NCBI GenBank assembly: GCA_977030845.1
Contig: OZ365115.1
Span: 17,050,001 to 17,114,000 of the forward strand
Length of the DNA stretch: 64,000 nucleotides
Source of the DNA: Fimbriosthenelais zetlandica
Taxonomy: Eukaryota
Reading direction: 5' to 3'
Shown: positions 35,000 through 57,100 of the stretch, one piece after another
How the letters are laid out: each line of letters starts with the position of its first letter
Position numbering within the stretch: the first letter of the stretch is position 1
Position numbers and translations under genes: made by a program
Notes under the pieces: generated by a model
The model's input: only the letters and a program-made list of their open reading frames with translations
What the model was told of the DNA's origin: nothing
Databases searched by the model: none

Positions 35000-35131
35000 N
35001 NNNNNNNNNNNNNNNNNNNNNNNNNNNNNNNNNNNNNNNNNNNNNNNNNNNNNNNNNNNNNNNNNNNNNNNNNNNNNNNNNNNNNNNNNNNNNNNNNNNN
35101 NNNNNNNNNNNNNNNNNNNNNNNNNNNNNNN
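35000..35131. other. Assembly gap (132 N) inside a CT-rich repeat
   Basis: Run of N. Confidence 1.
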
Positions 35132-39100: not shown

Positions 39101-42100
39101 TGCGACTTGCTTGGCCTGAAAACCCCCAGAGAGAGATATAATATAATTAGATCATTTATTAAATAAAGTGTCCTTTCAAAATTAACAAAAATCCTGTTTA
39201 TCTGTAGGAAAATTCTAGGTTGAATATATATATATAGGTAGAGAGCAGCATTATATTCAGGTGTGATTGATTGATTGATTGATTGATTGAATGGGGTTTA
39301 ACGTCACTTTCAACAATTTTTCAGTTATATCATGACGGTGCCTACTTGTAACAGTGAGCCCAATGCTCTTTTATAGTGCTGTCTTATACTGAGGTATCAT
39401 GCCGCAGGTACCTGACATGATACATCACCCAGTCACATTATACTGACACAGCAATGCGCCATCATTGGGACTTTAATATGGCTTGTGACATTTGACTTTT
39501 AATGATCAGAGTTATGAATCGCTCACCCATTTAGTTCTGTCTCGACCCTGTAGTAGAGCCTCAGCCCGCTCTCGCTCGAGTTGCTCCAGCTCCTCTTTGC
39601 GTCTCTCTTTTCGTTCCTTGACACGGTCGCTGACAGTGGGTGTAGATATGAGACGTAACTTTTCCTGGAGTTCTTTCTGTTTCTCCTCCTGAATTTGCTC
39701 CAATTTGCTCCTCTGCTCCTCTAGCTGCTGCTCTATTAACTCATTAAAGCTAGGCTGCTGCTGCTCCGACTGGCGCTGGTACGCGTAGGCCATCTTAAAG
39801 GCATTACCTACTATGTTGTTTAATTCCTCGGCCTGGGGGAGATAATGAAAAATTATTATAATATAAGACAATAGGTCAAAATGACTATCAGAGACTATAT
39901 TAGAAAATAAAAATTTCTTTTTAAATGATAAAATATATTAATATATAATCAAGTATAAAATAATGAAATGTACCAAGGACTAATTTAAAGGAAATGGTAA
40001 ATTTCTGCAGGGAATTAACAGCAATAATAGGGACTCTAATAAAAATTTTAAAATCGTTCTTTTATTTTTTAAATATGACCAAGGGCTGGATGTGGGGCGG
40101 AATTAGACAAAACTTTTTAAATGGAGTGAATATCTTTATCCGTTCAGAAGTTATCGGGGATTGAACGGCCAAAAAATGGACAAGATTTCTCACTTTTTTA
40201 CTATAGGCCAGCGGAGAAGAAATTGGCACGTCACTGTGTAATGAACGTCTGTTTTTTATTCTGTCACACAAACTTTACTTTCCAACCAATTTTTGTCAAA
40301 TCTTCAACATATATTCAAATTATCTGGTGCTAAATGATTATGCAAGACTATTTGACCTTTGACCTTGGCGTCCCCTCGTAATATGTAGGTTAAAAGTCAG
40401 TTGTTCTAGAGAATCAATGCTAAAGGACTGCTGTTGAATCAGAAATCTAATAACGGCTTTTACTCTTTCATCTTAAAGCTCCATATTCTACATATCTTAA
40501 GCTACGTATAGGTTTTTGTTTCATCGAGATCGACCCGGTAATTGCTTCAGAATTTAAACTTAAATTAACGCTGTTCTCGGACTAAAATTGTTTGGCCTTG
40601 TGGTGGTCTCACAGTGCAGCGGTCATTCACTTTCTGAGTAAGGCCAGAAAGTTGTATTGTTTGTTTCTGGTTCAACGACTGACCATCATAAAATCGCCCA
40701 TAGAATCGTCGACGTCATCGCCATTCTTTACGGGTTTTAGCCCAAAATAAAAAATCTAAAGTCCTGACTCTCCTCTGAAAAATTGAAATCTACGTTGGTC
40801 TTAAAAATGTTATGTGACCTGAAACAGTACTTTTTTGTTTGGCCTAACTGTAGTAAGCTGGGCCGGTGGTCGAAAAATACATAAAGAATCTATTTGGATA
40901 TTACACAGACTGCGCCGGTCCTAATACAATCAAAACCGACATAGACATGGAGTAGAAATGTCGAAAAAGGTGTCTAAACCATCAAAACGAACGGCCCGCT
41001 TATATTTACAGAGATTTCGGCGATTAATTCTCGGCTCGGAGCAGAAGCTCGGCTTGCCTATTGCAGTTTAGTGTATTAGCTTTACAGGTCGGGAAACGTC
41101 AATGTAGAATCTTGCGTTCCATATTTAACGGACTGCGCCGGTCCTAATAGCAATAAAAGTTTCTGATTATGGGGTAAAAATGTCTGAAAAAGCCGCCTAG
41201 ATCATCAAATTGAGCGGCCCGAATAGAATTCTTGAAGATATTTGCGATTGTAAGTTACCCCGTTTTCTCTTGGACAATAGACATAGGAAGGACCTGTCGT
41301 ATTATTATGAAAAAACGACCATCATGTACGTCTATTCGTGTTCTTTCAAATGCGGTAAAATAGAAGTTGATCAGATATGTTGGGACTGAGCAATGCCTCA
41401 AAACGTGAACACTACCAAATCAGTACTGTCAAGTCGCGAGCCAATTTTCACATGCCCAGCTGGGTGAGAATTTGAGCGGTGGATTGCACGCGTTACTAGA
41501 GTCCCTAGCAATAACATTAAACTTAAATTAAAGCTTCTTAAATTTAGCTTAAGAAATAAAATTTAAAACTTTTACAATAATAAATGCCCAGGCTATAAAT
41601 TTTATGGAGTGGCAAGGAGTGACTAATGTATATCACATACCAAGAAAGGAAATAACTTTTGAGTTGAAAACATTTTTTTAAATATTTTGGAAAAATTGTA
41701 GAGTGTAAAAATATAACATTTTACCTGCTCAGGTGAGGTGGTGATGAAGGCGTGACAATACTGGACACTGGTGTGACCCTTTGGTTCCCGAGCCAGAAAG
41801 GAGAATTGTCTATTGTCAGGATCACAGGTGGCATAAGATATACGCTTCAACGCATGGGCCATATATACACTCTGTAAATAAACAAAATCCATTTTTAGTA
41901 ACTGATTATTTAGTGGTTATAGCCGAGAGGTCTTTCTGAATGTGCGCACTACCTAAGGTCAATAATATTATAACAGGTGGTGGAGGGAGATAACCTCTAA
42001 TCGACCAAGTGAGAAAGCAAAGTATCCACTATCTTAGATTGATTATAACAGGTATAGTTGAGGGAGATAACCTCTAATCGACCAAGTGAGAAAGTAAAAT

Positions 42101-45100
42101 ATCCACTATCTTAGATTAATTATAACAGGTAGTTGAGGGAGGTAGCCCCTAATCGACCAAGTGCAAAAGTAAAATATCCACTTCCTTAGATCAATTATAA
42201 CAGGTAGTGGAGGGAGATAGCCTTTAACCGACCAAATGAGAAAGTAAAATATCCACTAACTCTTTACCAGTTAATCGCTTCAACGGCTTGAGGAGTTTCG
42301 GACCCCAAAACAAGAGTCAAAAAGTTTGCAATCTAACCAATTCCCTCCTTAAGGACCTCCACTTCCAATTCCACGATCAAGTCTCTTTCTTAAGATAAAC
42401 CGTTCCTTAAATTTTCCTATATTACACAAAGAAGCAATGCTTTTACCAGCAGAAAACGATAAAAATTCCATATATGTAATTATTACAAACCCTAGTTCCT
42501 TCTATCTTCGGTCCACACCCCAACACAAATGATAAATATCTCAACACAAGAGAGATCTCACACTTAACAGTGATAGTGATGTCATAATAGGTCAACAAGG
42601 TTCCCCGTTCTAAATAACTTCTTGCTGACATCAGATCTGTTCAGGATTTCTTGGATCAGTTTTTCTCCTCAGATAGACAGACACCAAAAGCCACAGAAGT
42701 AATTGGGGTTTTTATTTTATTGCAAAAGAATTTAAATGTACTGGTACATTCCAGAAATGTACTGAAAAAATACTTTTCCCTGAGTCATTTCTTTTCAGGT
42801 ATTATTTGAGTATTACTAAAAATACCAGCATAAGATATAGGTGGAAGGCAATCGTAAATACGGTTATTTTTCAAGAAAATCCTATACCCTTTTATCCAAC
42901 CCACTACCTCATTATACACCCCCCCCCCTCATCGTTCATGGTCCTCACTCCTGTCATCACCTCAGCCCAGCCCAACCAACCCCGCCCCCCATCCCTTTAT
43001 CCCCATGCAACCCTTCAAATCCCACCCATCAACACAAGCTTAATCCATCCCTTCATTATACTGTATTATGTCTGCTGCGTGTATCTTTTCCAATCAGCCT
43101 ACTGGGCAAACACGATCTATAATAGTACATGATCCGACCGCTGGCAACCATTGGACTGTTTGATGAGCAAACAGGAGTGTCGATCGTACGGTCAATTTTG
43201 AAGCACTTCTCTCATCACATCTTTCTCATACTGATCAGTATATATATGAGCATTGCATCCAGGTGACAAGGTGAGTAACTCAGTAAGGTACAATATCCTA
43301 GAGTTATAATACTCCCATTTAAGAAACCGATACTCAACTTTGGTCTAAAAAAAAGAGCCAACAGTGTACAAAATTCATCCAAAAAGGCATTTCTAAGATG
43401 TGAGAAGTTTAGTATAAGATACACGAATTATTATATCGACTCACTGAAGAATAACTTTCTTCTTTCCCCTATTTTTTATTTGTTTTATACTGAGCCGTCG
43501 ACAGTTTAGGTTTTTATTTCGCGAAAAGATCAAACTGCGATTTTCAAAGCTAACAAAGACACTCAAATCATCAATTTAAGATCTGGATCTTCTGCCGCAA
43601 CTGCCACAAGCGTACCTGCCGTTATCAGAGCCTTGCTATTTGCAAATGGCTTGGCAGATATGTACAGTACAGTCTGTTCACTCTAAGTTGATCCGAAACT
43701 ACCATACATATGTACTGTGGTTTCGGATCAACTAAGTGGAAGCCATAGAAAAGTCAACAAAAAGGGCCAGCCGCAACAAAAAGGTAATACTCGGATAGCA
43801 AAAGAACCCCAGTGGAGGGTCCCCATGAACAGTTTCACAGAGGCAAAGTTGGCTAGGTTTGGACAGGTATACATACATGTATATGAAAAGCATTCTAGTG
43901 AGTGTTGATGTTATCTTTGAGTCACTGTATTTTAATGTGACCTGTACGTGCGCACCTGTCGCATAAGTCATTAATGTATGAAAAATCAATATTATTATCT
44001 TTGGAGGGTTTATATCCTAAATTTATACTAGATCTCCTCAAACCCCTACCAAAAGACATCACCAGGAGGCATAATTTCCTCACATTATCACGTGTATGTG
44101 TTTTATCCCTTTGACATAATAACAGATCCATAATCTTCAAATCCCTCTAACCATAACTTGCTAGTTACATAAATGCGCACTATAGGTTACCATACAAGTT
44201 AATCTTCCCCACGCGGAAACATTCACTTTTTATATTGTCCTTTGAAAACTATTAAAGTCCATTGGTGATTGAATATGTATATCAATGAGTGAATTATGTA
44301 CTTAATAATTATGGATGTGTAGTAATAAAGTGGTAATAAAGATTATATTTGCATACCATATGATAGCACCGCATCGCACCAAATGGTTAAAAGATTAATA
44401 AATCAAAATTCACTACTAACTTCCTCTGACCTCTCCTTTTTAAACAATGCCTGTTCCATCCAGTTCGGCATTTGAAATGTATACTTCCTGTTAATTGGCT
44501 GACAAATTATTCTTTCCAGACAGGGAATTGAGGAAGGAGACGAGAAAAATGGCAGGACAGGAGGATCTGAAATATAACAGCCTTAGAAAGGTGACTTATA
44601 TTCTAACATGGTGTACAGCGACCATCTTGTACACCAATCAATGGATACAGGCCTACCGCAAACACCCCGACTACCTCCAGCTCACCGCCTCTCAATTCTC
44701 TATCGCTCTCATCATCCAACTGTTATATCTACTTCTCTACAAGAGAGACAACCACAGAGGAGAGCTCCAAAAATGGCCAAATTTCCTCGAGTCCACAGTC
44801 GTGGGTTTCCTTTTCTTGATTTCAGATTTGTGCCTCACCGCAGCCTTTGTAACTACCCCAGTGGCTGTGGTCTTCACAATCAAACTTCTGGATCCTGGTA
44901 TCAGCAAGATGAGATATGTCAAAGATTATCGCATAGGTTATCTCATAAAGGATCTCTTACCAGTGGCCGTCTTAGTTGCCATAGTAACAGGACTAAACCC
45001 GGGCTTTACAGGAAGTGGCGCCATCTTTGCCACCATTTCACTGGTAACATTTCATTTGGGTCGTAACAGATTGAAGGGTCCAAACCAAACAGTGATTGAA

Positions 45101-48100
45101 AATTTGGAGCCCCAAAAGATGAATTCAAAACTGAATTTCTTCGGAAGTTGTGGAGATGAAGTTGTTATTTTCATGACATTGTTGACTGGTAGTTTACTGG
45201 GTGTTGCTGGTGTTTTGATCCATGGACAAATCAATGCAAATTTCTGTCACACCATCAGACCGCAAGTGGCTTGGTTGGCACTCTACTTTTTCATCCAAAA
45301 GAATATGTCCTTATTGTTCTATATGGGGACGACCAGGTCATACTCTGGAACGATCAGTAGCCTACAAACTGTCTCAATAATCCTGGCAAGCACTTTCTTA
45401 CAGAGAAATGCAGTCTCTGTCCTATCAACATTGGTAACTTTGGCTGCTGTCCTAGTGGTCTGCCTGCAGGACTTTCTGGGTAAGAAATCAGATCAGGAAG
45501 GGGAAAGGACATCTCAGATTACAACCGATTCCTCTACTTTTAGTTCTACAAGGTCTACGGTGAGGTTCGTTAGGTTTCTAGCTGTCACGTTTCTAATCTA
45601 CCTTGCTGTACTCCATACCTGCAACACAAAGACAGGTTCACTAAAGAAAGGGGAGGGACCACCAACAATACGCGTGGCTTGGACCTTTACAGAAAATATA
45701 TCGGACGCACATCTGAAGAACTTTTTGAACATACAACATAGTTTTCCTGGCTCAAAAATGGAAATTTTTTGTTCAAATGAAGCCTGTATGAAATCTGTAG
45801 CCACCATGAGCAGCACACAAGATGTCAAGGCTTCTCGTTTACAGATTTTTGACTTGACAAATGGCACTCCTTTACATCAGTGGGTCTCCAGACATCCAAT
45901 TTTGAAAATTCAGGCAGGGCCCCACTATGAGAGACACTTACAAAAGGTGCTGCAATTAGCTCTTCTATGGAAGTACGGCGAAATCGTAGTGGATGCCAAT
46001 ATAAAAATAACTCATATGGAAGCATTTGAAACCAAAGTCAGGAAAATGGATGGCAATGTATGCTACAATGGAAATAACCTGCCTTTAGCATTGTGCTACA
46101 CTGAAAAATCAGGTCATCCATTTATAAGGCATTTGATGACGAATTTTGTTGCCAGCTATCAAATCAAGGGTCCGACAGTGTGGCCTTCTAAATGGCAATA
46201 CAAACAGGACATTTGGCCTTATGACTTTGATTTTACCAATTTTGTGGATAACTACTCACATAATTGCACACATCCATGTACCAAAATCCCAATAAAAAAT
46301 ACATCGCCAAGTCTAGCCTTAGATAGGGTCTTAAAAAGAAAAAAAATTGCCCTGTTAAGCTACACTACAACAAACTTTGGGGACGAAATCCAGAGCTTGG
46401 CAGTAGCACATCTTTTGCCTCGTGTGGATTATTTAATACAACGAGAAAACCCTAAAACAATACCAGCCGAAGATGTTGTTCTTGTAACAAACGCATTTTG
46501 GACACATAAAGGGATACTTTTTCAATCACCTAACTCTATTAAACCTCTATTAGTGTCCGTGCATTTGAATAACATTATAAAAGGTATAGAATCTAAGGTT
46601 ACAAAATCTAAGGAGTATTTCATAAAACATGGGCCTGTGGGAACAAGAGACACCAACACCTTGAAAATATTTAAATCTCTTGGAATTCCAGCTGTCTTTT
46701 GTGGGTGCATGACATTGTGGATTAAAAACCCATTTGATTACGGACACCCCAGAGGGAACAAGATATACATAGTGGACATCCAGGGGTCACCTAAACAGTT
46801 ACTTCCTAATTCTATAATAAAAAATGCCAAAGTCCTGCAGCACTCTCTGGGAACGCCACGGGGAAGTCAGGTACGCTTTCGTGTGGCAGAAGAGCTGCTA
46901 CGAATGTACGCTCAGGCAAAACTAGTCATTACAGGACGAATACATGTGGCACTTCCCTGTGTAGCCCTGGGCACGCCTGTAATTTTCCTAAACAAAAAAA
47001 CACTCTATGGTGCGACATCTGAATCGCCTTCAGCCAGAGTGACTGGGTTGTTAGATCTGTTCCATACAGTAGATTGGTATAAAATGACAGACGTAGAAAT
47101 TAAGAATTTCTTACATAACTTTAACTGGGATAATCCGCCACCTAATCCCAATCCTGAACTCGCACGCAAGCTGATGAAGACAACCAAGGGGATGGTAACA
47201 AAGGATGAAAGTATAAAAAATGCTATGGACATGTACTATGATTTTAATGCTTGATGTTCTGAATTCCCATTCCCAAAAGAAGCGTCCACATGCAGAACGA
47301 TCTAAACCACATTCATACTATTGTGTGAAAATCCAGGTAGTAGATTCAAAACATCATACGTTAAACTAGGAAGGCCAATCTTTATACCCTTGCAGTCAAG
47401 GGCTGGAATTATTTTTAACATGTCTTGAGTTCGCAAACCAAAGGTTGAATACTGATGGTGCTGCTATCACCAATTCACTAGTTGTGACTCTGTTCTGCTC
47501 ATGGATCGACGCTTGAACTGTCTTACTTTGAGCGGTAATTCAAAATGATGTACAGTGTATGTTTTTTGGTTTGTAATTTTCCGGGAGATTTTCGGGTTAT
47601 TTTCTTCAATAAAATCATAGCAGGTTATTCAATATTTTGTTATGATTAATAAAAACCAGTCCTTACAAGTCGAGATAACGTTTTAGCTCTCAGACAGATG
47701 ATAAAATTTACGACTTTTTAAGACCTATCCCAGCAGGCACAAGACGTCTTCACAACGTCTTTAGACGTTGTAGATTAGACGTTGTGAAGACGTCTTGTGC
47801 CTGCTGGGATGAGCTTTATATAAGAGCTAAGACCTAAAAAAACAGGTTGCAAATGACAAACACAGAATCCTAACAGTTACTATGTACTGTAAGAAGCACT
47901 AGAGAAGCACTGGAGTACCAGTCGGTGCTGCCCTCTGTCAAAACAGATTACTACTCATCACTTTCTTATGGCGACCAATTTTACTATTAAGATAGATGCA
48001 TACTTTAATTACATTTTTTTTTTCAAATTACATCAAAAACCTGGACATGTTCAATTATGTGAATAGTTATCCACAAATACGGTGAAATTGAAATCATAAG

Positions 48101-51100
48101 ACCAAATTTCCCTTTTGAATATCAATTCATAAGGCGACACTGAAGGACCCTTGAATTGATAGCTGGCAACAAACAACTGATTGTTCAGTTTGGATGTCTT
48201 GAGACCCACTTATATGAAGGAATGCCGTATGTCAAAATCTGTAAACAATAATAATAAGCATCCGAAAAAACCGACCGACCTATTTGCTCATAATTATGCT
48301 TAATTATATTCATTACATAGCCCCATGGCCATAACGTCAGGTTAATGATGTCATCTTTAGATTGTAGATCGATGTGAAGGGTGTACACCCACCGACAAAA
48401 CATCCCAGAAAACATTTAATGTACAAGTAAGAAAAGGTAGTATTTCACTCTGAGTGACGTCTAGAGATGATTTCAGGGGTGGTACAGAGCCCACCCACTC
48501 ACCAACCCCATCCCTCCTCATTCGAATGTACATTCGAAGTCCAAAGGTTCTTCCACATAGGAAGATAATAAAAAATATTATTTCTTCAATTAACTCGACC
48601 CATTCTCAAAGATACATCTATAGAAAAAGTGTATCACGTGTAATATTTGTCACACATGGATTTGCATTAGAAGCTGCTAAATTAGCAAAAAACCACTATT
48701 GGCAAGGGGACGGCTATTAGCAAGGTAAATTGCTATTAGTAAGGGGACTGCTTTTAAACATTCTTGGTGAATATCTTTCACAACACGGAAATTAGGGAGG
48801 AGAAATGACGAGAAGTGGAAATCTGAAGTGTAGCAGCCTACAGGTGACTTATATTCTAACATGGTGTACAGCGACCATCTTGTACACCAATCAATGGATA
48901 CAGGCCTACCATAACCACCCCGACTACCTCCAGCTCACCGCCTCTCAATTCTCTATCACTCTCACCATCCAACTGTTCTGTCTACTTCTCTACAAGAGAG
49001 ACAACCACAGAGGAGAGCTCCAAAAATGGCCAAATTTCCTCGAGTCCACAGTCGTGGGTTTTCTTTTCTTGATTTCAGATTTGTGCCTCACCGCAGCCTT
49101 TGTAACTACCCCAGTGGCTGTGGTCTTCACAATCAAACTTCTGGATCCTGTTATCAGCAAGATGAGATATGTCAAAGATTATCTCATAGGTTATCTCATA
49201 AAGGAGCTATTACCAGTGGCCATCTTAGTTGCCATAGCAACAGGACTAAACCCGGGCTTTACAGGAAGTGGCACCATCTTTGCCACCATTTCACTGGTAA
49301 CATTTCATTTGGGTCGCATCAGACTGAAAGATCCTAATACAGGAGTGAATGAAAATTCCAAAAAGACAGGATGTGAAAAATTGAACTGCCTTCCAAGATA
49401 TGAAGTTGTTATTTTCATGACATTGTTGACTGGTAGTTTACTGGGTGTCGCTGGTGTTTTGATCCATGGACAAATCAATGCAAATTTCTGTCACGCCATC
49501 AGACCGCAAGTGGCTTGGTTGGCACTCTACTTTTTTATCCAAAAGAATATGTCTTTATTGGTCTATATGGGGACGAGCAGGTCATACTCTGGGACGATCA
49601 GTAGCCTACAAACCGTCTCAATCATTCTGGCAAGCACTTACTTACAGGGAAATGCAGTCTCTGTCCTATCAACATTGGTAACTTGGGCTGCTGTCCTAGT
49701 GGTCTGCCTGCAGGACTCAGATCGGAATTTAAGGGAAAACAGATCTCAGACTACGACAAATTCTTCTGATTTTTCATATGGATCTGGTCTGATGTCTACA
49801 CTGAAGTTCGCCAGATTTCTAGCTATCACATTTCTAATCTATCTTGCAGTCTTCCACATCTGTAGAAATAGCCAGGGAAAACCACCAACAATACGTGTGG
49901 CTTGGACCTTTACAGAAAAGATATCGGACGCACATCTGAACAACCTTTTGAATGTACAACATAGTTTTCCTGGCTCAACAATGGAAGTTTTCTGTTCAAA
50001 TGAAGCCTGTATGAAATCTGTAGCCATCATTAGCAGTGCACAGGATGTCAAGGCTTCTCGTTTGCAGATTTTTGACTTGACAAATGGCACTCCTTTACAT
50101 CAGTGGGTCTCCAGACATCCAATATTGAAAATTCAGGCAGGGCCTCACTATGAGAGACACTTACAAAAGGTGCTGCAATTAGCTCTTCTATGGAAGTACG
50201 GCGAAATTGTAGTGGATGCCAATATAAAAATAACTCATATGGAAGCATTTGAAACCGAAGTCAGGAAAATTGATGGCAATGTATGCTACAATGGAAATAA
50301 CCTGCCTTTAGCATTGTGCTACACTGAAAAATCAGGTCATCCATTTATAAGACATCTGATGACGAATTTTGTTGCCAGCTATCAAATCAAGGGTCCGACA
50401 GTGTGGCCTTCTAAATGGCGATACAAAAAGGACATTTGGCCTTATGACTTTAATTTTACCAACTTTGTAGATAAATATTCACATAATTGTACAAATCAAT
50501 GTACTGGAATACCAATTAAAAACTCATCAATAACATTTGATAAGGTTTTAAAAGGACAGAAATTCGCCCTTTTATGCTACAGTTCGGACAATATTGGGGA
50601 CGAGATCCAGAGTTTGGCAGCAGCACATGTTTTGCCACGTGTGGATTATTTCATACAACGAGACAACCCTAAAACAATACCTGCCGAAAATGTCGTACTT
50701 ATAGCTAATGGATTCTGGCCAAAAGAAGGCATACTTTTCCAGTCCCCTAACACGATCAAACCTCTCTTGGTGGCAATGCATTTGGATAACATTATAAAAG
50801 TTATAGAATCTAAGGTTACAAAATCAAAGGAGTATTTCATCAAACATGGACCTGTGGGAACAAGAGACATCAACTCTTTGAAAATATTTCATTCACTTGG
50901 AATTCCAGCTGTATTCAGTGGTTGCATGACGTTGTGGATTCGGAACGCATTTGGTCATGAACAGCCCAGGGAGAATAAGATATACATAGTAGGGTCATCT
51001 GAGCCATTACTTCCTCAGTCGGTGAGAAAAAATGCGATCTATTTGACTCACACAGTTAATTTTCCAAACAATAAATACGAGCGCTTTCGTGTGGCAGAAG

Positions 51101-54100
51101 AGCTGTTGCGAATGTATGCCAATGCAAAACTAGTTATTTCATCTAGAGTACATGTTGCACTTCCTTGTGTAGCCATGGGCACGCCAATCATTTTCTTAAA
51201 CCGAAAAAGCATGTATGGGGCAACAACGAGAAGCCCTTCGGCCAGAGTGTCAGGGTTGTTAGATCTGTTCCATACAGTAGATTGGTATAAGATGACAGAC
51301 GCAGAGATTAAGAACTTCTTACATAACTTTAACTGGGATAATCCACCACCTAATCCAAATCCTGAACTCGCACGCAAGCTGATGAAGACAACCAGGGGGA
51401 TATTAACAAAGGATGACATTATCAAAGATTCCTTGCACATGTACTATGATTTTATTGCTAATCATTATTGAGTTGGAAATTTACATTAATTATTTTATTT
51501 TCAATAAAACTATAATTTAATTATAATTTGTAAAGACAAAATAATACACTAAGCACGGAAGAGTGGCATATCTCTGGACATTTTCTGCGCATTTTAGATC
51601 CATATATGAGAAAAACCATGCACAGAAAAAAAGCTATATAAAATATTTTATATTGCTGATGAGCTATTAAGACGAAATTTATGAGGCGTAACCATATAAT
51701 TATCGAACAAACATCATGGGTGTTTCATTGAGGGATTACTTACGACGCCTGAAGATGCGAAAAGACAGTTCAGAATAGAATTGTGAATTATTGGAATGTA
51801 CTATTTATTATTTTTATAAATGACATACTTAATTAGCCTCTTTGTTCTCGTGTATCGATGAATGCGGACGATACTGCCTTTGTTTTGATAGATGACGACC
51901 TAAACAATTTGTACAATTTAATGCAAAACGATACTAAGCAATTTTCGTCCTGGTGTGCTAATACTGGTTTAAAAATTAATAGTAAACAATCCTTCTCACA
52001 AATAAATTGTAAGAAATCTCTGAAAGGTGTTGTCAATTCATGTAATTGTAAACTCAAGTGTAATAATGACGAAATAGTTTTAAAACGCACTGTAACATAC
52101 CTTGGAATTAAATTAGACTGGATCGGAGTACAGCCATATTGGTGCTAAAGACCTTCCTCCTACCTATCCTTGATTTCGGTATTAAAAAAATGGAGAAGAA
52201 ATATCTGGAAATAGATTTCACTCGGATGACTTGGTATACATAGAGGACGACACAAATGTATATAAAATGTAACCCAGTGCCCCAGTGGCACACGCTGGCA
52301 ACTTGTCACACATGGCTAATCCCTGGGTCACCCAGTCCATCCATTAGAAACTCTGCTATCTTGGGCTAGGGTCTCCATTTAATAATTTCCTGGCAAATAA
52401 CTTTTTCACGATCTGGCAATGATACCGGAAATGACGGGAAGTGGGAATCTGAAATATAACAGCCTACAGGTGACTTATATTCTAACATGGTGTACAGCCA
52501 CCATCTTGTACACCAATCAATGGACCCAAGCCTACCACAAACACCCCGACTACTTCCAGCTCACCGCCTCTCAATTCTTCCTCGCTCTAGTCATCCAACT
52601 GTTCTATATACTTCTATACAAGAGAGACAACCAGAGAGCAGAGCCCCCAAAATGGCCGAATTTCCAGATCTCAGTCGTAAGCATCCTTTTCTTGATTTCA
52701 GATTTGTGCCTCACCGCAGCCTTTGTAACTACCCCAGTGGCTGTGGTCTTCACAATCAAACTTCTGGATCCTGTTATCAGCAAAATTAGATGCATCAAAG
52801 ATTGTCTCATAAAGGAGGTATTACTAGTGGCCATCTTAGTTGCCATAGCAACAGGACTAAACCCGGGCTTTACAGGAAGTGGCACCATCTTTGCCATCAT
52901 TTCACTGGTAACATTTCATTTGAGTCGCATCAGACTGAAAGATCCAAATGCAGTAGTGAATGAAAATTCCAAAAAGACCGGATGTGTAAAATTTAACTTC
53001 CTTCCAAGATATGAAGTTGTTATTTTCATGACATTGTTGACTGGTAGTTTACTGGGTGTCGCTGGTGTTTTGATCCATGGACAAATCAATGCAAATTTCT
53101 GCCATGCCATCAGACCGCAAGTGGCTTGGTTGGCACTCTACTTTTTCATCCAAAAGAATATGTCTTTATTGGTCTATATGGGGACGAGCAGGTCATACTC
53201 TGGAACGATCAGTAGCCTACAAACTGTCTCAATAATCCTGGCAAGCACTTACTTACAGGGAAATGCAGTCTCTGTCCTATCAACATTGGTAACTTGGGCT
53301 GCTGTCCTAGTGGTCTGCCTGCAGGACTCAGATCGGAAAAGGGAAAACAGATCTCAGATGACGACAGATTCTTCTGATTTTTCATATGGATCTGTTCTGA
53401 TGTCTACACTGAAGTTCGCCAGATTTCTAGCTATCACATTTCTAATCTACCTTGCAGTCTTCCATATCTGCAGAAATAGCCAGAGAAAACCACCAACAAT
53501 ACGTGTGGCTTGGACCTTTACAGAAAAGATATCGGACGCATATCTGAACAACCTTTTGAATGTACAACATAGTTTTCCTGGCTCAACAATGGAAGTTTTC
53601 TGTTCAAATGAAGCCTGTATGAAATCTGTAGCCACCATGAGCAGTACACAGGATGTCAAGGCTTCTCGTTTACAGATTTTTGACTTGACAAATGGCACTC
53701 CTTTACATCAGTGGGTCTCCAGACATCCAATATTGAAAATTCAGGCAGGGCCTCACTATGAGAGACACTTACAAAAGGTGCTGCAATTAGCGCTTCAATG
53801 GAAGTACGGTGAAATTGTAGTGGATGCCAATATAAAAATAACTCATATGCAAGCATTTGAAACCGAAGTCAGGAAAATGGATGGCAATGTATGCTACAAT
53901 GGAAATAACCTGCCTTTAGCATTGTGCTACACTGAAAAATCAGGTCATCCGTTTATAAGACATCTGATGACGAATTTTGTTGACAGCTATGAAATCAAGG
54001 GTCCGACAATGTGGCCTTCTAAATGGCAATGGAAATCCGAAAGAGACATTTGGCCTCATGACTTTAATTTTAATAACTTTGTCAACAACTATTCACTTGC

Positions 54101-57100
54101 TTGTACAAGTCCTTGTACCAGAATTCCAATAATACATGCGCAAGAGAGCTTAGAATTAGATCCTGTCTTAAATAGTAAGAAATTTGCCCTAATACGATAC
54201 TACCGTACCGACAATATAGGGGATGAAGTTCAAAGCTTGGCTGCAGCACATGTTTTGCCTCGGGTTGACCATTTCATACAAAGAGACAATGCAATAACTA
54301 TACCAGCCGAAAATGTTGTACTTATAACTAATGCATTTTGGCCAAAAGAAGGGGTAATTTTCCAATCGCCTAACACTGTTAAGCCTCTATTAGTGGCAGT
54401 TCATTTGGATGATACAGAAGAAGGATTGGAAGCCCGAGTTACAAAAGCCAAGGAGTATTTCATAAAACATGGGCCTGTTGGAACAAGAGACACCAACTCC
54501 TTGAATATTTTAAATTCGCTTGGAATTCCAGCTCTATTCAGTGGCTGTATGACATTGTGGATTCAAAACCCATTTGGTCATAAACTACCCAGGGGGAACG
54601 AGATATATGTTGTGGACGTAGTGAGGGGACAAGAGCCATTACTTCCTGAATTTGTTAGAAAAAATGGCGTCTTCTTAAAACACATCAGGGGGTTTCCAGA
54701 TAATCACCAGGTAAAATTTCGCATAGGAGAAGAACTGCTACGAATGTACGCACAGGCAAAAGTAGTGGTGACAGCTCACATACATGTGGCACTTCCCTGT
54801 GTAGCCATGGGCACGCCAGTCATTTTCTTCAATCGAAGAAACTTGGTGGGTGCCTCCAGTAAAAAACCCTCAGCCAGAGTGACTGGGTTGTTAGATCTGT
54901 TCCATACAGTAGATTGGTATAAGATGACAGACGTAGAAATTAAGAACTACTTACATAATTTTAATTGGGATAATCCACCACCTAATCCCAATGCAGAAAA
55001 TGCAAAGGAGATGATGAAGACAATGAGGGGCATGTTAACAAAGGATGACAGTATCAAAAATTCTATAGATATGTACTATGGTTTTTAGTGTGTATATGAC
55101 TTGTATACATGTATACATGTTTATGGTGACATAAATTTGCCCGCGTGCTACGTGGCAAAGGGGATGAATCACTTTATTATTAATTTAACTGCACGATTTT
55201 GATTATTATTATTATACGCTAGTAGTTACGCTTGAAAGCTTCCATGGGTCGATTCATCTGAAGAATTCACCAAGAATTCGGAAATTCTCCCCGAGTTCAG
55301 GTCGTTGATTCTCTTGAAATAACGTTATATATTTATCTTCAATTCATGAAGATCTATGCAACTCCGTTTTTTTTCTTCTAAGAAAACTAATTAATCCATG
55401 ACAAGATCTTCGAACTTGGACTACCTAGGTGAGTTGGCATGGACCAACTACCATGATAATAGTTGGTGAATGGATTGAATGCCATCTATTTTTTTACATG
55501 TTAATTAATGATCATTACATGTTAATTGTAACTTTGTTTAAACAATTTTTGAAAACGAATAAAGTTATTCTCTCATTGTTTTTCTATATCCGACCTAAAT
55601 CATACAAAGTTCCCACTACATATTAGTCATAAGCAGGTTATAATGCACTATACACTGCTTGTCCCATATATATATGAGATGCACGGATGCAATCAATGGT
55701 GATTTAACGCCATGCATGGATGCATCGTTCTCGCTGACACACATAGGTTGGAAAAAACCTTTTCCTTGACTTTTCGATGTAGTATGGCAACCCTATACAT
55801 ATTGGTTCTGAAAACATCCCCTAGGGTGGAGACAGTCGAAGTTTATGAATACAAATTTTATTTTTATCTAGTCCGTATAGTTAATAACAATACGGACTAC
55901 TGTAGTCCCGTATATTTAATAATAATACGGACTGCATTATTCATAGTGACGGCCTCTTTCTTGAATTTCTCAGCAAAAACAAAAGAAAATCGGTGCAACT
56001 AAGAAGCCTGGAGAATCACCGGCGAATGACTGAGTGCTGCCCTCTTTCAAAACCCAATGGTACTAAACTAAACTCATCACGTTCTCATATGGGACCAGTT
56101 ACTTTCACTATAATATATACAATCAAGTAGATATAATATGAATGTATGTATACATAGGCCTACTGAATTTGTGTAAGATGTAAATTCTATACCATGACAT
56201 TTAGGGACGTTTTGAAGGGCATAATTATATTAAGGTCTAACTATAATCAGTTGACTTCTACTTTTCCATCATCATTATTAATCGTCGTAAGTCCTCGAAA
56301 AATCATAATTTCATTTCGGAATTTTTTCACTGTGTCTGTGACTGTCACACATTAGTTTCATTGACACCGATTGCAATAAATTATCCTTCCTTTAACATCC
56401 TTTGTCCTGTCACATGTTCTCCGTGTCAGCATTTGATCAATGAATATATGTGACGAAATAAACAAAGAATACAAAATTACAAAAATGGGACTGTCTCGGT
56501 AAGTATCTGTCCTGATTAAAACCAAAGAGAAATCTCGAATACAGAGCCTATAAAAGGGCCTGGCAAATACAATATATTATCATTGGCGTGAGAGAGAAAA
56601 AAACAGTGTCATAAGCTTCAGAAAGCTAATCCCAGACGCAAGGGTCGATATGAATTATCTCATAAATCCAGCGCCTGCAGACAAGCCTCTGTTGTCTTTG
56701 TGTGCGGGATTATCTTAGAGGATTAACGAGAAAGTGTATATACATGTACGTCTCTATGGCTGGTGTACTATCTGTCTAAGGCCTAAAGTCAAAATTAGCA
56801 TAAAGCTGTATACGGGCCAGGCCCAATTAATATTAATGGGTTTTTGTCTTTTGTATTTTTCACTATCTATGAATTTCCTGTGAACATTTATACGCATAAA
56901 GCTATACATTCTGTTCACTCTAAGTTGATCCGAAACTACCATACATATGTACTGCGGTTTCGGATCAACTTATAGAGTGAACAGACTGTAGGATAATATT
57001 AGGACCATCAATGCTGCTAGTGTCTTTGGCACCATTATAATTGAACATTTAAAAAAAACAATACATGTATGCTTGGTGTATGAATATGAAAAATGCATTT

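What the first reader, a model, noticed from the sequence alone, without database searches (positions are those of the whole stretch)
44549..55088. Single-chain transporter + pseudo-glycosyltransferase + pyruvyltransferase: a candidate animal glycan-pyruvylation system
Seen in all three ORFs (copy 1 coordinates): ~10 TM segments (44591-45466), hydrophilic linker, an 11th TM preceded by basic residues (45566-45622), a GT32/A4GALT-like domain (~45660-46200) and a pyruvyltransferase domain (from ~46345: NxGDEIQSLA, GPVGTRD, GCMTL, RIHVALPC..GTPV). N-glycosylation sequons occur after TM11. Established: pyruvyltransferases use PEP; the TPT family includes PEP translocators; fission yeast pyruvylates Golgi galactose with Pvg1 plus separate TPT-family PEP transporters; SLC35-type 10-TM folds have cytosolic termini, so an 11th TM would place the enzymes in the lumen. 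Pyruvylated glycans in animals are known mainly from sponge aggregation factor. Inference: donor import, acceptor recognition and transfer are fused in one Golgi protein that adds a sialic-acid-like negative charge to glycans. I know of no description of this architecture.
Basis: partly seen in the sequence, partly recalled or inferred. Interest (0 to 1): 0.95.

Follow-up and report, generated by a model that had tools for sequence, protein, structure and literature searches.

The report
Fused transporter–pyruvyltransferase genes, three tandem copies
Three intact neighbouring genes in this invertebrate each join a membrane transporter, a sugar-enzyme look-alike and an enzyme that adds pyruvate to sugars; they belong to a widespread unstudied animal family, but only the pyruvate-adding part still looks able to work here.

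Summary
Three intronless + strand ORFs (901, 888 and 889 aa) share one plan: 10 TM helices, a linker, an 11th TM helix, a GT32-like GT-A domain and a PF04230 pyruvyltransferase domain. Loop charges (K+R 17 against 1) put the two enzyme domains in the lumen.

The N-terminus is TPT-derived, but this shows only through relatives. It has lost three of the four phosphate-binding residues of plastid phosphate translocators: K, Q, Q, T instead of K, Y, K, R. The middle domain has lost the DXD motif (D-A-N). Only the pyruvyltransferase keeps every family-invariant residue, and copy 3 has Arg→His at a predicted PEP-binding arginine.

The architecture is not unique. The best database match is 34% identical. 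Full-length relatives are recorded as uncharacterised proteins in a starfish (Patiria miniata, at least five paralogues) and krill, and a cluster of TPT + pyruvyltransferase proteins is labelled mostly mollusc. Most relatives keep the transporter residues, and many carry an extra true GT32 domain. I found no paper on the fusion.

Best reading: these are divergent members of an undescribed family of Golgi pyruvylation enzymes. Here the transporter and GT32-like parts probably serve as anchor and scaffold. No expression data could be obtained. Earlier scan notes cover only this same stretch.

The parts
44549..47254 (+). Copy 1: complete 901-aa ORF plus stop. TM1-10 at about 44591-45466, TM11 at about 45566-45622, GT32-like domain 45650-46342, pyruvyltransferase domain 46343-47251.
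   Evidence: ORF and translation. PF04230 E 7e-13. Domain limits transferred from alignment A2.
48805..51471 (+). Copy 2: complete 888-aa ORF plus stop. This is the copy that was modelled.
   Evidence: AlphaFold2 model pLDDT 80.7, pTM 0.74.
48823..49746 (+). Copy 2 TPT-derived 10-TM module (residues 7-314). K111 is kept. Q246 replaces the Tyr339 equivalent, and Q269/T270 (49609-49614) replace the Lys362/Arg363 equivalents.
   Evidence: hhalign against the family TM profile: 97.1%, E 5e-11. BLASTP against the P0001 TPT domain: E 3e-6. Foldseek top hit 5y78, TM 0.71. Residue table. Residue roles from bioRxiv 10.1101/169169.
49780..49872 (+). Copy 2 TM11 (residues 326-356), a signal-anchor-like helix that carries the chain from the cytosol into the lumen.
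   Evidence: Helix in the model. K+R count is 17 in loops predicted cytosolic and 1 in loops predicted luminal.
49873..50559 (+). Copy 2 GT32-like GT-A domain (residues 357-585). The DXD position reads D471-A472-N473 (50215-50223), and the preceding conserved G-G reads G-E.
   Evidence: hhalign against the true GT32 domains of long relatives: 98.4%, E 7.6e-15. Domain model pLDDT 89.5. Fold hits to A4GALT/A4GNT with TM 0.55-0.64 and to GT-A toxin-type transferases and Och1. Column counts.
50560..51468 (+). Copy 2 pyruvyltransferase domain (residues 586-888). All family-invariant residues are kept, including N596/G598/D599, R687/D688 and R781/H783.
   Evidence: PF04230 E 2.8e-15 on the isolated piece. 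Invariant-column table. R-x-H aligned to Pvg1p. Fold hits to 5ax7 and to a bacterial PF04230 cluster, TM 0.79.
52419..55088 (+). Copy 3: complete 889-aa ORF plus stop. GT32-like domain 53481-54179, pyruvyltransferase domain 54180-55085. H787 (54777-54779) replaces the near-invariant Arg that aligns with Pvg1p R337.
   Evidence: (PF04230 E 1.8e-10).
48036..48173 (-). Inverted 48-codon fragment of a family member. It matches residues 522-569 of copy 2 at 62% identity and lies between copies 1 and 2.
   Evidence: tblastn of copy 2 against the window, E 6e-12.
41626..41916 (-). Open frame on the opposite strand with a PTB/PID domain match. It is probably an exon of the host gene whose intron holds the three copies.
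   Evidence: PF00640 E 9.4e-5, 22.9 bits against a cut-off of 20.9.

Best explanation
The three genes are lineage-specific tandem paralogues of a widespread, uncharacterised eukaryotic family. The family is built as a TPT-type 10-TM carrier, an 11th TM helix, a GT32-like domain and a bacterial-type PF04230 ketal-pyruvyltransferase. Many relatives add a second, true GT32 domain at the C-terminus. The protein sits in a secretory-pathway membrane, most likely the Golgi (inferred). Its N-terminus and the TM10-TM11 linker face the cytosol, and both enzyme domains face the lumen. In the family at large, the carrier probably exchanges cytosolic PEP for the phosphate that the pyruvyltransferase releases, giving a closed 1:1 cycle (inferred). 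The enzyme then caps a terminal sugar with a negatively charged pyruvate ketal. In this window's copies, only the pyruvyltransferase retains its invariant residues. The carrier has lost three of four phosphate-binding residues and the GT32-like domain has lost DXD. These two modules most likely survive as membrane anchor and scaffold, perhaps for acceptor binding or oligomerisation. Luminal PEP would then have to come from another carrier. Copy 3, with Arg changed to His at a predicted PEP-binding position, may be weakened or altered. Shown here: the architecture, the homologies, the residue states, the topology signal and purifying selection. Inferred: Golgi location, PEP as donor, the acceptor, and loss of transport.
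For: Intact ORFs and PF04230 hits. Full-length relatives at E 1e-97 to 1e-117 that carry PF03151 at E 1e-31 to 1e-37 together with PF04230. The family TM profile hits the TPT crystal structure 5y78 at E 8.5e-41, with K-x-x-E-P and K-R aligned to Lys204 and Lys362/Arg363 (roles from 10.1101/169169). The window TM module is homologous to the family module but reads K, Q, Q, T. The middle domain matches GT32 by profile and by fold, and its DXD reads D-A-N. All 18 checked conserved pyruvyltransferase columns are kept in copies 1 and 2, and the R-x-H motif aligns to Pvg1p (PMC4872226, PMC10435577). Positive-inside count is 17 to 1. dN/dS is 0.24-0.35 in the pyruvyltransferase, 0.29-0.66 in the middle domain and 0.45-0.76 in the TM module, while the flanks are unalignable. 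Named animal relatives exist. The three copies sit inside a supported clade that includes the krill protein.
Against: No transcript evidence: no sequencing run could be listed. Pfam does not recognise the TM or middle modules of the window proteins. The fold of the TM module in the model leans on an alignment of canonical relatives. Loss of transport is read from four residues only, and a Lys next to the lost Tyr position (K247) could partly compensate. The family keeps Phe at the position where plant PEP translocators have Asn and where Phe clashes with PEP in the TPT models. That is weak evidence against a preference for PEP. The TM module still shows some constraint (dN/dS 0.45 between copies 2 and 3). 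No pyruvylated glycan is known from this species.
Confidence: 0.6

Rival explanations
1. The first reader's full model applies to these copies as they stand. The N-terminal module still imports PEP through a remodelled binding site, so each protein is a self-sufficient import-and-transfer machine.
For: The 10-TM fold is retained and the ORFs are intact. K111 is kept and a new Lys (K247) lies next to the lost Tyr position. There is some purifying selection on the TM module (dN/dS 0.45-0.76). The closest short-class relatives also have Gln at the Tyr339 position yet keep K-R.
Against: Lys362 and Arg363 are strictly conserved in higher-plant pPTs, and mutating the phosphate-binding residues greatly reduced exchange (10.1101/169169). 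Here they are Gln and Thr in all three copies. PF03151 fails to hit even at E<=10. The TM module has the most relaxed dN/dS of the three modules.
Confidence: 0.2
2. The carrier module of the family imports a nucleotide sugar for the GT32 module rather than PEP. The fusion would then couple sugar addition, not donor supply, to pyruvylation.
For: PF03151 also contains nucleotide-sugar transporters. Fold hits include SLC35E1/E2, SLC35C2 and the GDP-fucose transporter alongside PEP translocators. Long-class relatives carry a true GT32 with DXD that needs a nucleotide sugar. An amoebozoan relative uses a UAA-family transporter (PF08449) instead. The family keeps the Phe that disfavours PEP in the TPT models.
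Against: Most relatives keep the complete K/Y/K/R phosphate site of plastid phosphate translocators. The family profile matches the TPT structure far better than SLC35B1 (E 8.5e-41 against 5e-13). Short-class members have no true GT32 yet keep the carrier. A PEP/Pi antiporter matches the stoichiometry of the pyruvyltransferase reaction (inference).
Confidence: 0.12
3. The three copies are unexpressed relics or decaying duplicates of a horizontally acquired or retroposed gene, with no present function.
For: They are intronless, lie inside an intron of another gene on the opposite strand, and have retroelement sequence nearby. Functional residues are lost in two of three modules. An inverted gene fragment lies between copies 1 and 2. 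No RNA run was listed.
Against: All three have intact reading frames of about 2.7 kb. Overall dN/dS is 0.36-0.45, falling to 0.24-0.35 in the pyruvyltransferase domain at dS 0.5-0.74. The flanks have diverged beyond alignment while the coding sequence is kept. Every invariant pyruvyltransferase residue is kept in copies 1 and 2. Relatives in other genomes are also intronless and tandemly duplicated.
Confidence: 0.08

Closest known systems
Fission yeast Golgi pyruvylation system: Pvg1p pyruvyltransferase with the Pet1p/Pet2p PEP transporters
   Same: The logic is the same. A PF04230 enzyme sits in the Golgi lumen behind a membrane anchor, uses PEP and relies on TPT-family carriers for supply (PMC10435577, PMC4872226). 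The R-x-H PEP-binding motif aligns, and the fold matches 5ax7.
   Different: In yeast these are separate proteins; here they form one chain with a GT32-like domain between them. The sequence relation to Pvg1p is very distant (profile E 0.039, C-terminal motif only). The window domain is 31-37% identical to bacterial enzymes, so it is not a Pvg1p orthologue. The window carrier lacks the K-R pair.
Uncharacterised animal proteins of the same architecture: Patiria miniata XP_038074474.1 and at least four paralogues, and Meganyctiphanes norvegica CAL4064010.1 (UniProt name 'Sugar phosphate transporter domain-containing protein')
   Same: Same domain order and a full-length alignment: krill against copy 2 gives BLASTP E 3e-78 at 27% identity. 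They are placed in the same family tree. Where the genomic context of unnamed relatives was read, they are intronless and tandemly duplicated.
   Different: The krill protein keeps the carrier's K-R pair (read from the alignment), and PF03151 is on record for both the krill and starfish proteins. The starfish proteins have an extra C-terminal true GT32 domain. The window copies are the most divergent members seen (best library match 34%).
Plastidic phosphate translocators (GsTPT2 structure 5Y78/5Y79; plant PEP/phosphate translocators)
   Same: 10-TM DMT fold (Foldseek TM 0.71). The top Swiss-Prot fold hits are PPT1-3. The family profile gives E 8.5e-41.
   Different: The window copies keep only one of the four phosphate-binding residues. 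An 11th helix and two luminal enzyme domains are appended. The membrane is in the secretory pathway, not a plastid.
GT32 glycosyltransferases (A4GALT/Gb3 synthase, A4GNT, Och1, IPC mannosyltransferases)
   Same: GT-A fold with TM 0.55-0.64 to A4GALT/A4GNT models. Profile homology to true GT32 domains. Luminal position behind a TM anchor.
   Different: No PF04488 or PF04572 hit. DXD is replaced by D-A-N and the conserved G-G by G-E. It is probably not a metal-dependent transferase.
Bacterial polysaccharide pyruvyltransferases and bacterial GT-pyruvyltransferase fusions
   Same: The N-x-G-D-E-x-Q and A-L-P-C-x-A-x-G-T-P motifs are shared, with 31-37% identity over the whole domain. Structural TM is 0.79. 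Fusion of a glycosyltransferase to PF04230 is common in bacteria, including a cyanobacterial Caps_synth/Gly_transf_sug + PF04230 cluster.
   Different: The two closest bacterial loci whose ORFs I read hold stand-alone proteins of about 320-340 aa. None of the bacterial hits listed here carries a fused transporter.

Membership tests
PF04230 PS_pyruv_trans (ketal-pyruvyltransferases) | Significant match to the family profile above the curated cut-off | tested here: met
   41.6-57.4 bits against a cut-off of 25.3 for all three copies.
PF04230 PS_pyruv_trans (ketal-pyruvyltransferases) | Two-lobed alpha/beta/alpha fold like Pvg1p and bacterial members | tested here: met
   Foldseek hit to 5ax7 at E 6e-4. 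TM 0.79, rmsd 2.6 A over 280 residues to a bacterial PF04230 cluster.
PF04230 PS_pyruv_trans (ketal-pyruvyltransferases) | PEP-binding Arg and His (Pvg1p R337/H339; CsaB H308 and K328 region) | tested here: met
   R781/H783 of copy 2 and the same pair in copy 1 align to Pvg1p R-L-H. Copy 3 has H787 in place of the Arg, so the feature is not met for copy 3.
PF04230 PS_pyruv_trans (ketal-pyruvyltransferases) | Acceptor-side Asp and second PEP Arg (Pvg1p D106, R217) | tested here: inconclusive
   Invariant N-x-G-D and G-x-R-D motifs are present in all copies. They could not be aligned directly to Pvg1p because only the C-terminal motif aligned.
PF04230 PS_pyruv_trans (ketal-pyruvyltransferases) | PEP-dependent pyruvyl transfer to a sugar | not testable with these tools
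   Needs an enzyme assay.
PF03151 TPT / plastidic-type phosphate translocators | Direct profile match | tested here: not met
   No PF03151 or PF00892 hit at E<=10 on the isolated N-terminal piece. Homology is shown only through relatives.
PF03151 TPT / plastidic-type phosphate translocators | 10-TM DMT fold | tested here: met
   Ten helices in the model. 5y78 is the top PDB hit, TM 0.71. PPT, TPT and SLC35E are the top Swiss-Prot hits. The model depends on the family alignment.
PF03151 TPT / plastidic-type phosphate translocators | Phosphate-binding Lys204, Tyr339, Lys362, Arg363 (GsTPT2 numbering) | tested here: not met
   The window copies read K, Q, Q, T. 21 of 33 relatives read K, Y, K, R. 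Three independent alignments agree.
PF03151 TPT / plastidic-type phosphate translocators | Counter-exchange of a phosphorylated substrate with Pi | not testable with these tools
   Needs a proteoliposome assay.
GT32 (PF04488 Gly_transf_sug / PF04572 Gb3_synth) | Profile homology and GT-A fold | tested here: met
   hhalign 98.4%, E 7.6e-15 to the true GT32 domains of long relatives. A4GALT, A4GNT and At4g19900 are the top fold hits. There is no direct Pfam hit.
GT32 (PF04488 Gly_transf_sug / PF04572 Gb3_synth) | DXD metal/nucleotide-sugar motif | tested here: not met
   The position reads D-A-N in all three copies. True GT32 domains of relatives read D-T-D (second Asp in 20 of 26). Four short-class relatives keep D-L-D in this domain.
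Orthologue of S. pombe Pvg1p | Closest relationship to fungal Pvg1p rather than to other PF04230 lineages | tested here: not met
   The family profile against 5ax7 gives E 0.039. More than 550 bacterial loci match, the best 80 at E 1e-38 to 1e-50.

The most novel reading that the evidence does not exclude
This family is the missing enzyme for glycan pyruvylation in animals such as molluscs and sponges. It works as a physically coupled machine: a PEP/Pi antiporter hands PEP to a tethered luminal pyruvyltransferase and removes its phosphate product one for one, and in long forms a built-in GT32 first adds the sugar to be capped. The window copies would then be a derived state in which transport-dead, GT-dead paralogues keep the carrier fold as a docking or oligomerisation module and diversify acceptor specificity through their fast-evolving pyruvyltransferase domains.
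Probability: 0.35. Interest if true: 0.8.

Novelty: new variant of a known kind. Interest (0 to 1): 0.62.

Why it matters
Pyruvate ketals give glycans a sialic-acid-like negative charge. In animals they are documented in sponge aggregation factor and in Aplysia nerve glycolipids, and a 2019 review calls information on eukaryotes scarce (PMC6801904). Neither review names an animal enzyme (PMC6801904, PMC6994554). A conserved, multi-copy family in echinoderm and crustacean genomes, with related mollusc-labelled proteins, fuses a phosphate-translocator-type carrier to a PF04230 enzyme. That gives a concrete, testable candidate and suggests pyruvylation may be more common in invertebrates than glycomics has shown. 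The fusion would also be a case where a Golgi donor transporter and its consuming enzyme sit on one chain, with built-in product/substrate exchange. The window locus adds an evolutionary point: paralogues repeatedly lose the carrier's binding site (also seen in several long-class relatives) while keeping the 10-TM body.

Tried and rejected
- **Direct searches that found nothing.** Pfam assignment of the TM and middle modules found nothing at E<=10. phmmer of copy 2 against PDB sequences found nothing relevant.
- **Word-indexed homology searches.** Searches with copy 2 and with the 40-row alignment returned nothing. This is probably because the words are drawn from the first 500 residues, mostly the hydrophobic TM region. 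A search restricted to the luminal part of P0001 worked.
- **Expression.** RNA and any-type sequencing-run look-ups listed no run, so read laying was not used and expression is untested.
- **Taxa of unnamed relatives.** A literature search for the assembly accessions of unnamed relatives found nothing, so their taxa remain unknown. The short contigs L003 and L007 show no poly(A) tail, so they give no transcript evidence.
- **Promoter scan.** The bacterial-type promoter and terminator scan of a spacer was at chance level and does not apply to an animal gene.
- **Contamination or bacterial insert: rejected.** Gene GC (0.41) is close to window GC (0.39). A PTB-domain exon and a retroelement ORF flank the cluster. 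Relatives sit in annotated animal genomes.
- **Orthology to Pvg1p: rejected**.
- **Active GT32 in the middle domain: rejected as the leading reading** because DXD is lost.
- **Literature on the fusion.** Four searches found no paper describing it. The library lacks most subscription journals.

Full report
**What is there.** The + strand holds three uninterrupted ORFs at 44549-47254, 48805-51471 and 52419-55088, of 901, 888 and 889 aa. The proteins are 76-81% identical. Beyond about 60 bases upstream of the start codons the flanks no longer align. A 48-codon inverted fragment of the same gene lies between copies 1 and 2, at 48036-48173 on the minus strand. The cluster sits next to a minus-strand open frame with a PTB/PID match at 41626-41916. 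This agrees with an earlier scan note that the cluster is nested antisense in an intron of a PTB-domain gene. A retroelement ORF lies at 18222-20684. Gene GC (0.41) is close to window GC (0.39). This is resident animal DNA, not contamination.

**Pyruvyltransferase module.** All three copies hit PF04230 above Pfam's cut-off, and the isolated C-terminal piece of copy 2 gives E 2.8e-15.
- A profile of the family aligns its R-x-H motif to the R-L-H of Pvg1p, that is R337 and H339. Both residues are modelled PEP binders (PMC4872226, PMC10435577).
- In a 38-row alignment, copies 1 and 2 keep all 18 conserved columns I checked. Copy 3 has His in place of the near-invariant Arg.
- The modelled domain matches Pvg1p (5ax7). 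It also superposes on a bacterial PF04230 cluster with TM 0.79 over 280 residues.
- The domain is 31-37% identical to more than 550 bacterial loci, from Cyanobacteria, Flavobacteriales, Planctomycetes and others. The two closest loci whose ORFs I read hold stand-alone proteins of about 320-340 aa. It is therefore a bacterial-type enzyme and not a Pvg1p orthologue.

**Middle module.** Pfam sees nothing in this region.
- A 40-row profile of the region matches a profile of the true GT32 domains (PF04488 + PF04572) that long relatives carry at their C-terminus. The match has 98.4% probability, E 7.6e-15, over 143 columns.
- A domain model (pLDDT 89.5) finds A4GNT, A4GALT and other GT32 proteins as the best Swiss-Prot folds, TM 0.55-0.64. 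In the PDB it finds GT-A toxin-type transferases and Och1.
- At the DXD position the true GT32 domains read D-T-D. The window copies read D-A-N, and the conserved G-G just before it reads G-E. Four short-class relatives keep D-L-D in this same domain.

**Transporter module.** No Pfam family hits the window N-terminus. Its identity comes through relatives.
- An exhaustive phmmer search found full-length relatives at E 1e-97 to 1e-117, the best only 34% identical. These carry PF03151 at E 1e-31 to 1e-37.
- The window module aligns to the P0001 TPT domain (BLASTP E 3e-6) and to the family TM profile (hhalign 97.1%, E 5e-11).
- The family profile hits the TPT crystal structure 5y78 at E 8.5e-41.
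- The full-length model (pLDDT 80.7, pTM 0.74) has ten helices followed by an 11th. Its best PDB fold is 5y78 (TM 0.71). Its best Swiss-Prot folds are PEP/phosphate translocators, SLC35E1/E2 and TPTs.
- In GsTPT2 the phosphate is held by Lys204, Tyr339, Lys362 and Arg363. These residues are strictly conserved in higher-plant pPTs, and mutating them greatly reduced exchange (bioRxiv 10.1101/169169).
- Of 33 relatives, 21 read K, Y, K, R. The short-class relatives P0001-P0005 read K, Q, K, R. All three window copies read K, Q, Q, T, and three independent alignments agree on this.
- The canonical phosphate site is therefore gone in this locus. Several long-class paralogues show similar losses.

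**Topology.** With the N-terminus placed in the cytosol, loops predicted to be cytosolic hold 17 Lys+Arg and loops predicted to be luminal hold 1. That places the TM10-TM11 linker in the cytosol and both enzyme domains in the lumen. This matches the type II orientation reported for Pvg1p (PMC4872226). Two cysteines in the middle domain are invariant across 40 relatives, which fits a luminal, oxidising environment (inference).

**Selection.** Overall dN/dS between copies is 0.36-0.45. By module it is 0.24-0.35 in the pyruvyltransferase, 0.29-0.66 in the middle domain and 0.45-0.76 in the TM module. dS is about 0.13 across the TM and middle modules but 0.5-0.74 in the pyruvyltransferase. This suggests gene conversion of the 5' two thirds or a mosaic history, and agrees with an earlier scan note on patchwork identity. 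Intact frames, constrained coding sequence and unalignable flanks argue against pseudogenes.

**The family.**
- Named members are Patiria miniata XP_038074474.1 and at least four paralogues (1145-1158 aa, with the extra GT32 domain) and Meganyctiphanes norvegica CAL4064010.1 (869 aa). All are called 'uncharacterized' or 'Sugar phosphate transporter domain-containing protein'.
- An ESM Atlas cluster of TPT + PF04230 proteins is labelled mostly Mollusca.
- A Mastigamoeba protein fuses a UAA-family transporter to a pyruvyltransferase.
- Forms without a transporter exist, as do forms with GT8 in place of the terminal GT32.
- Unnamed relatives sit on eukaryote-like contigs, intronless and often in tandem.
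- In a maximum-likelihood tree of the luminal part, the three window copies form one clade (100/100). That clade lies inside a supported short-class clade with the krill protein (96/91). The long class, which includes the starfish proteins, is separate (99/96).

**Literature.** Pyruvylated animal glycans are reported from Microciona aggregation factor and from Aplysia kurodai nerve glycosphingolipids (PMC6801904, PMC6994554). Pvg1p depends on the Golgi PEP transporters Pet1p and Pet2p (PMC10435577). Four searches found no paper describing the fused architecture. The held library is incomplete.

**Reading.** For the family, a phosphate-translocator-type carrier tethered to a luminal pyruvyltransferase makes mechanistic sense. 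The enzyme releases one phosphate per PEP used, and these carriers exchange strictly 1:1, so import and export would balance (inference).
- Two caveats apply. The family keeps the Phe that disfavours PEP in the TPT models. The carrier might instead feed a nucleotide sugar to the GT32 module.
- For this window, only the pyruvyltransferase looks competent. The carrier and the GT32-like domain look like retained scaffolds, and copy 3 may be impaired.
- Expression could not be tested, because no runs were listed.

**Verdict.** The locus holds new, divergent members of an unstudied family whose architecture is a new variant of the known Golgi pyruvylation system.

Noticed in passing
window 18222-20684 (+): An 820-codon open frame whose translation has a Y-A-D-D motif, typical of a non-LTR retrotransposon reverse transcriptase. 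It looks largely intact.
   Followed up: no
window 48036-48173 (-): An inverted 48-codon fragment of the same gene family (residues 522-569, 62% identity) between copies 1 and 2. It is a remnant of a further rearranged copy.
   Followed up: partly
window 44549-55088: Synonymous divergence between copies is about 0.13 in the TM and GT32-like modules but 0.5-0.74 in the pyruvyltransferase module. This suggests gene conversion limited to the 5' two thirds.
   Followed up: partly
window 39515-39937 (-) and 41626-41916 (-): Minus-strand open frames: one with a PTB/PID match and one with a Glu/Gln/Lys-rich helical stretch. They are probably exons of a PTB-domain adaptor gene that hosts the cluster in an intron.
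   Followed up: partly
window 44530-44560, 48795-48816, 52419-52442: The start codon shared by copies 2 and 3 is mutated in copy 1, which starts about 10 bases further on. Copy 3 has an extra in-frame ATG four codons upstream.
   Followed up: no
window 35000-35131: A run of 132 N, either an assembly gap or masked. It was left untouched.
   Followed up: no
L002 10001-13471 and 14839-18348; L004 2531-5848 and 13566-15848: Relatives in other eukaryotic contigs are also intronless and tandemly duplicated, next to ordinary eukaryotic genes (BAF250_C, Mito_carr).
   Followed up: partly
proteins P0040, P0037, P0091, P0048: Module swapping occurs within the wider family. Variants seen are a UAA-type transporter instead of TPT (Mastigamoeba), GT8 instead of the terminal GT32, and a member whose middle domain still scores as a true GT32.
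   Followed up: partly
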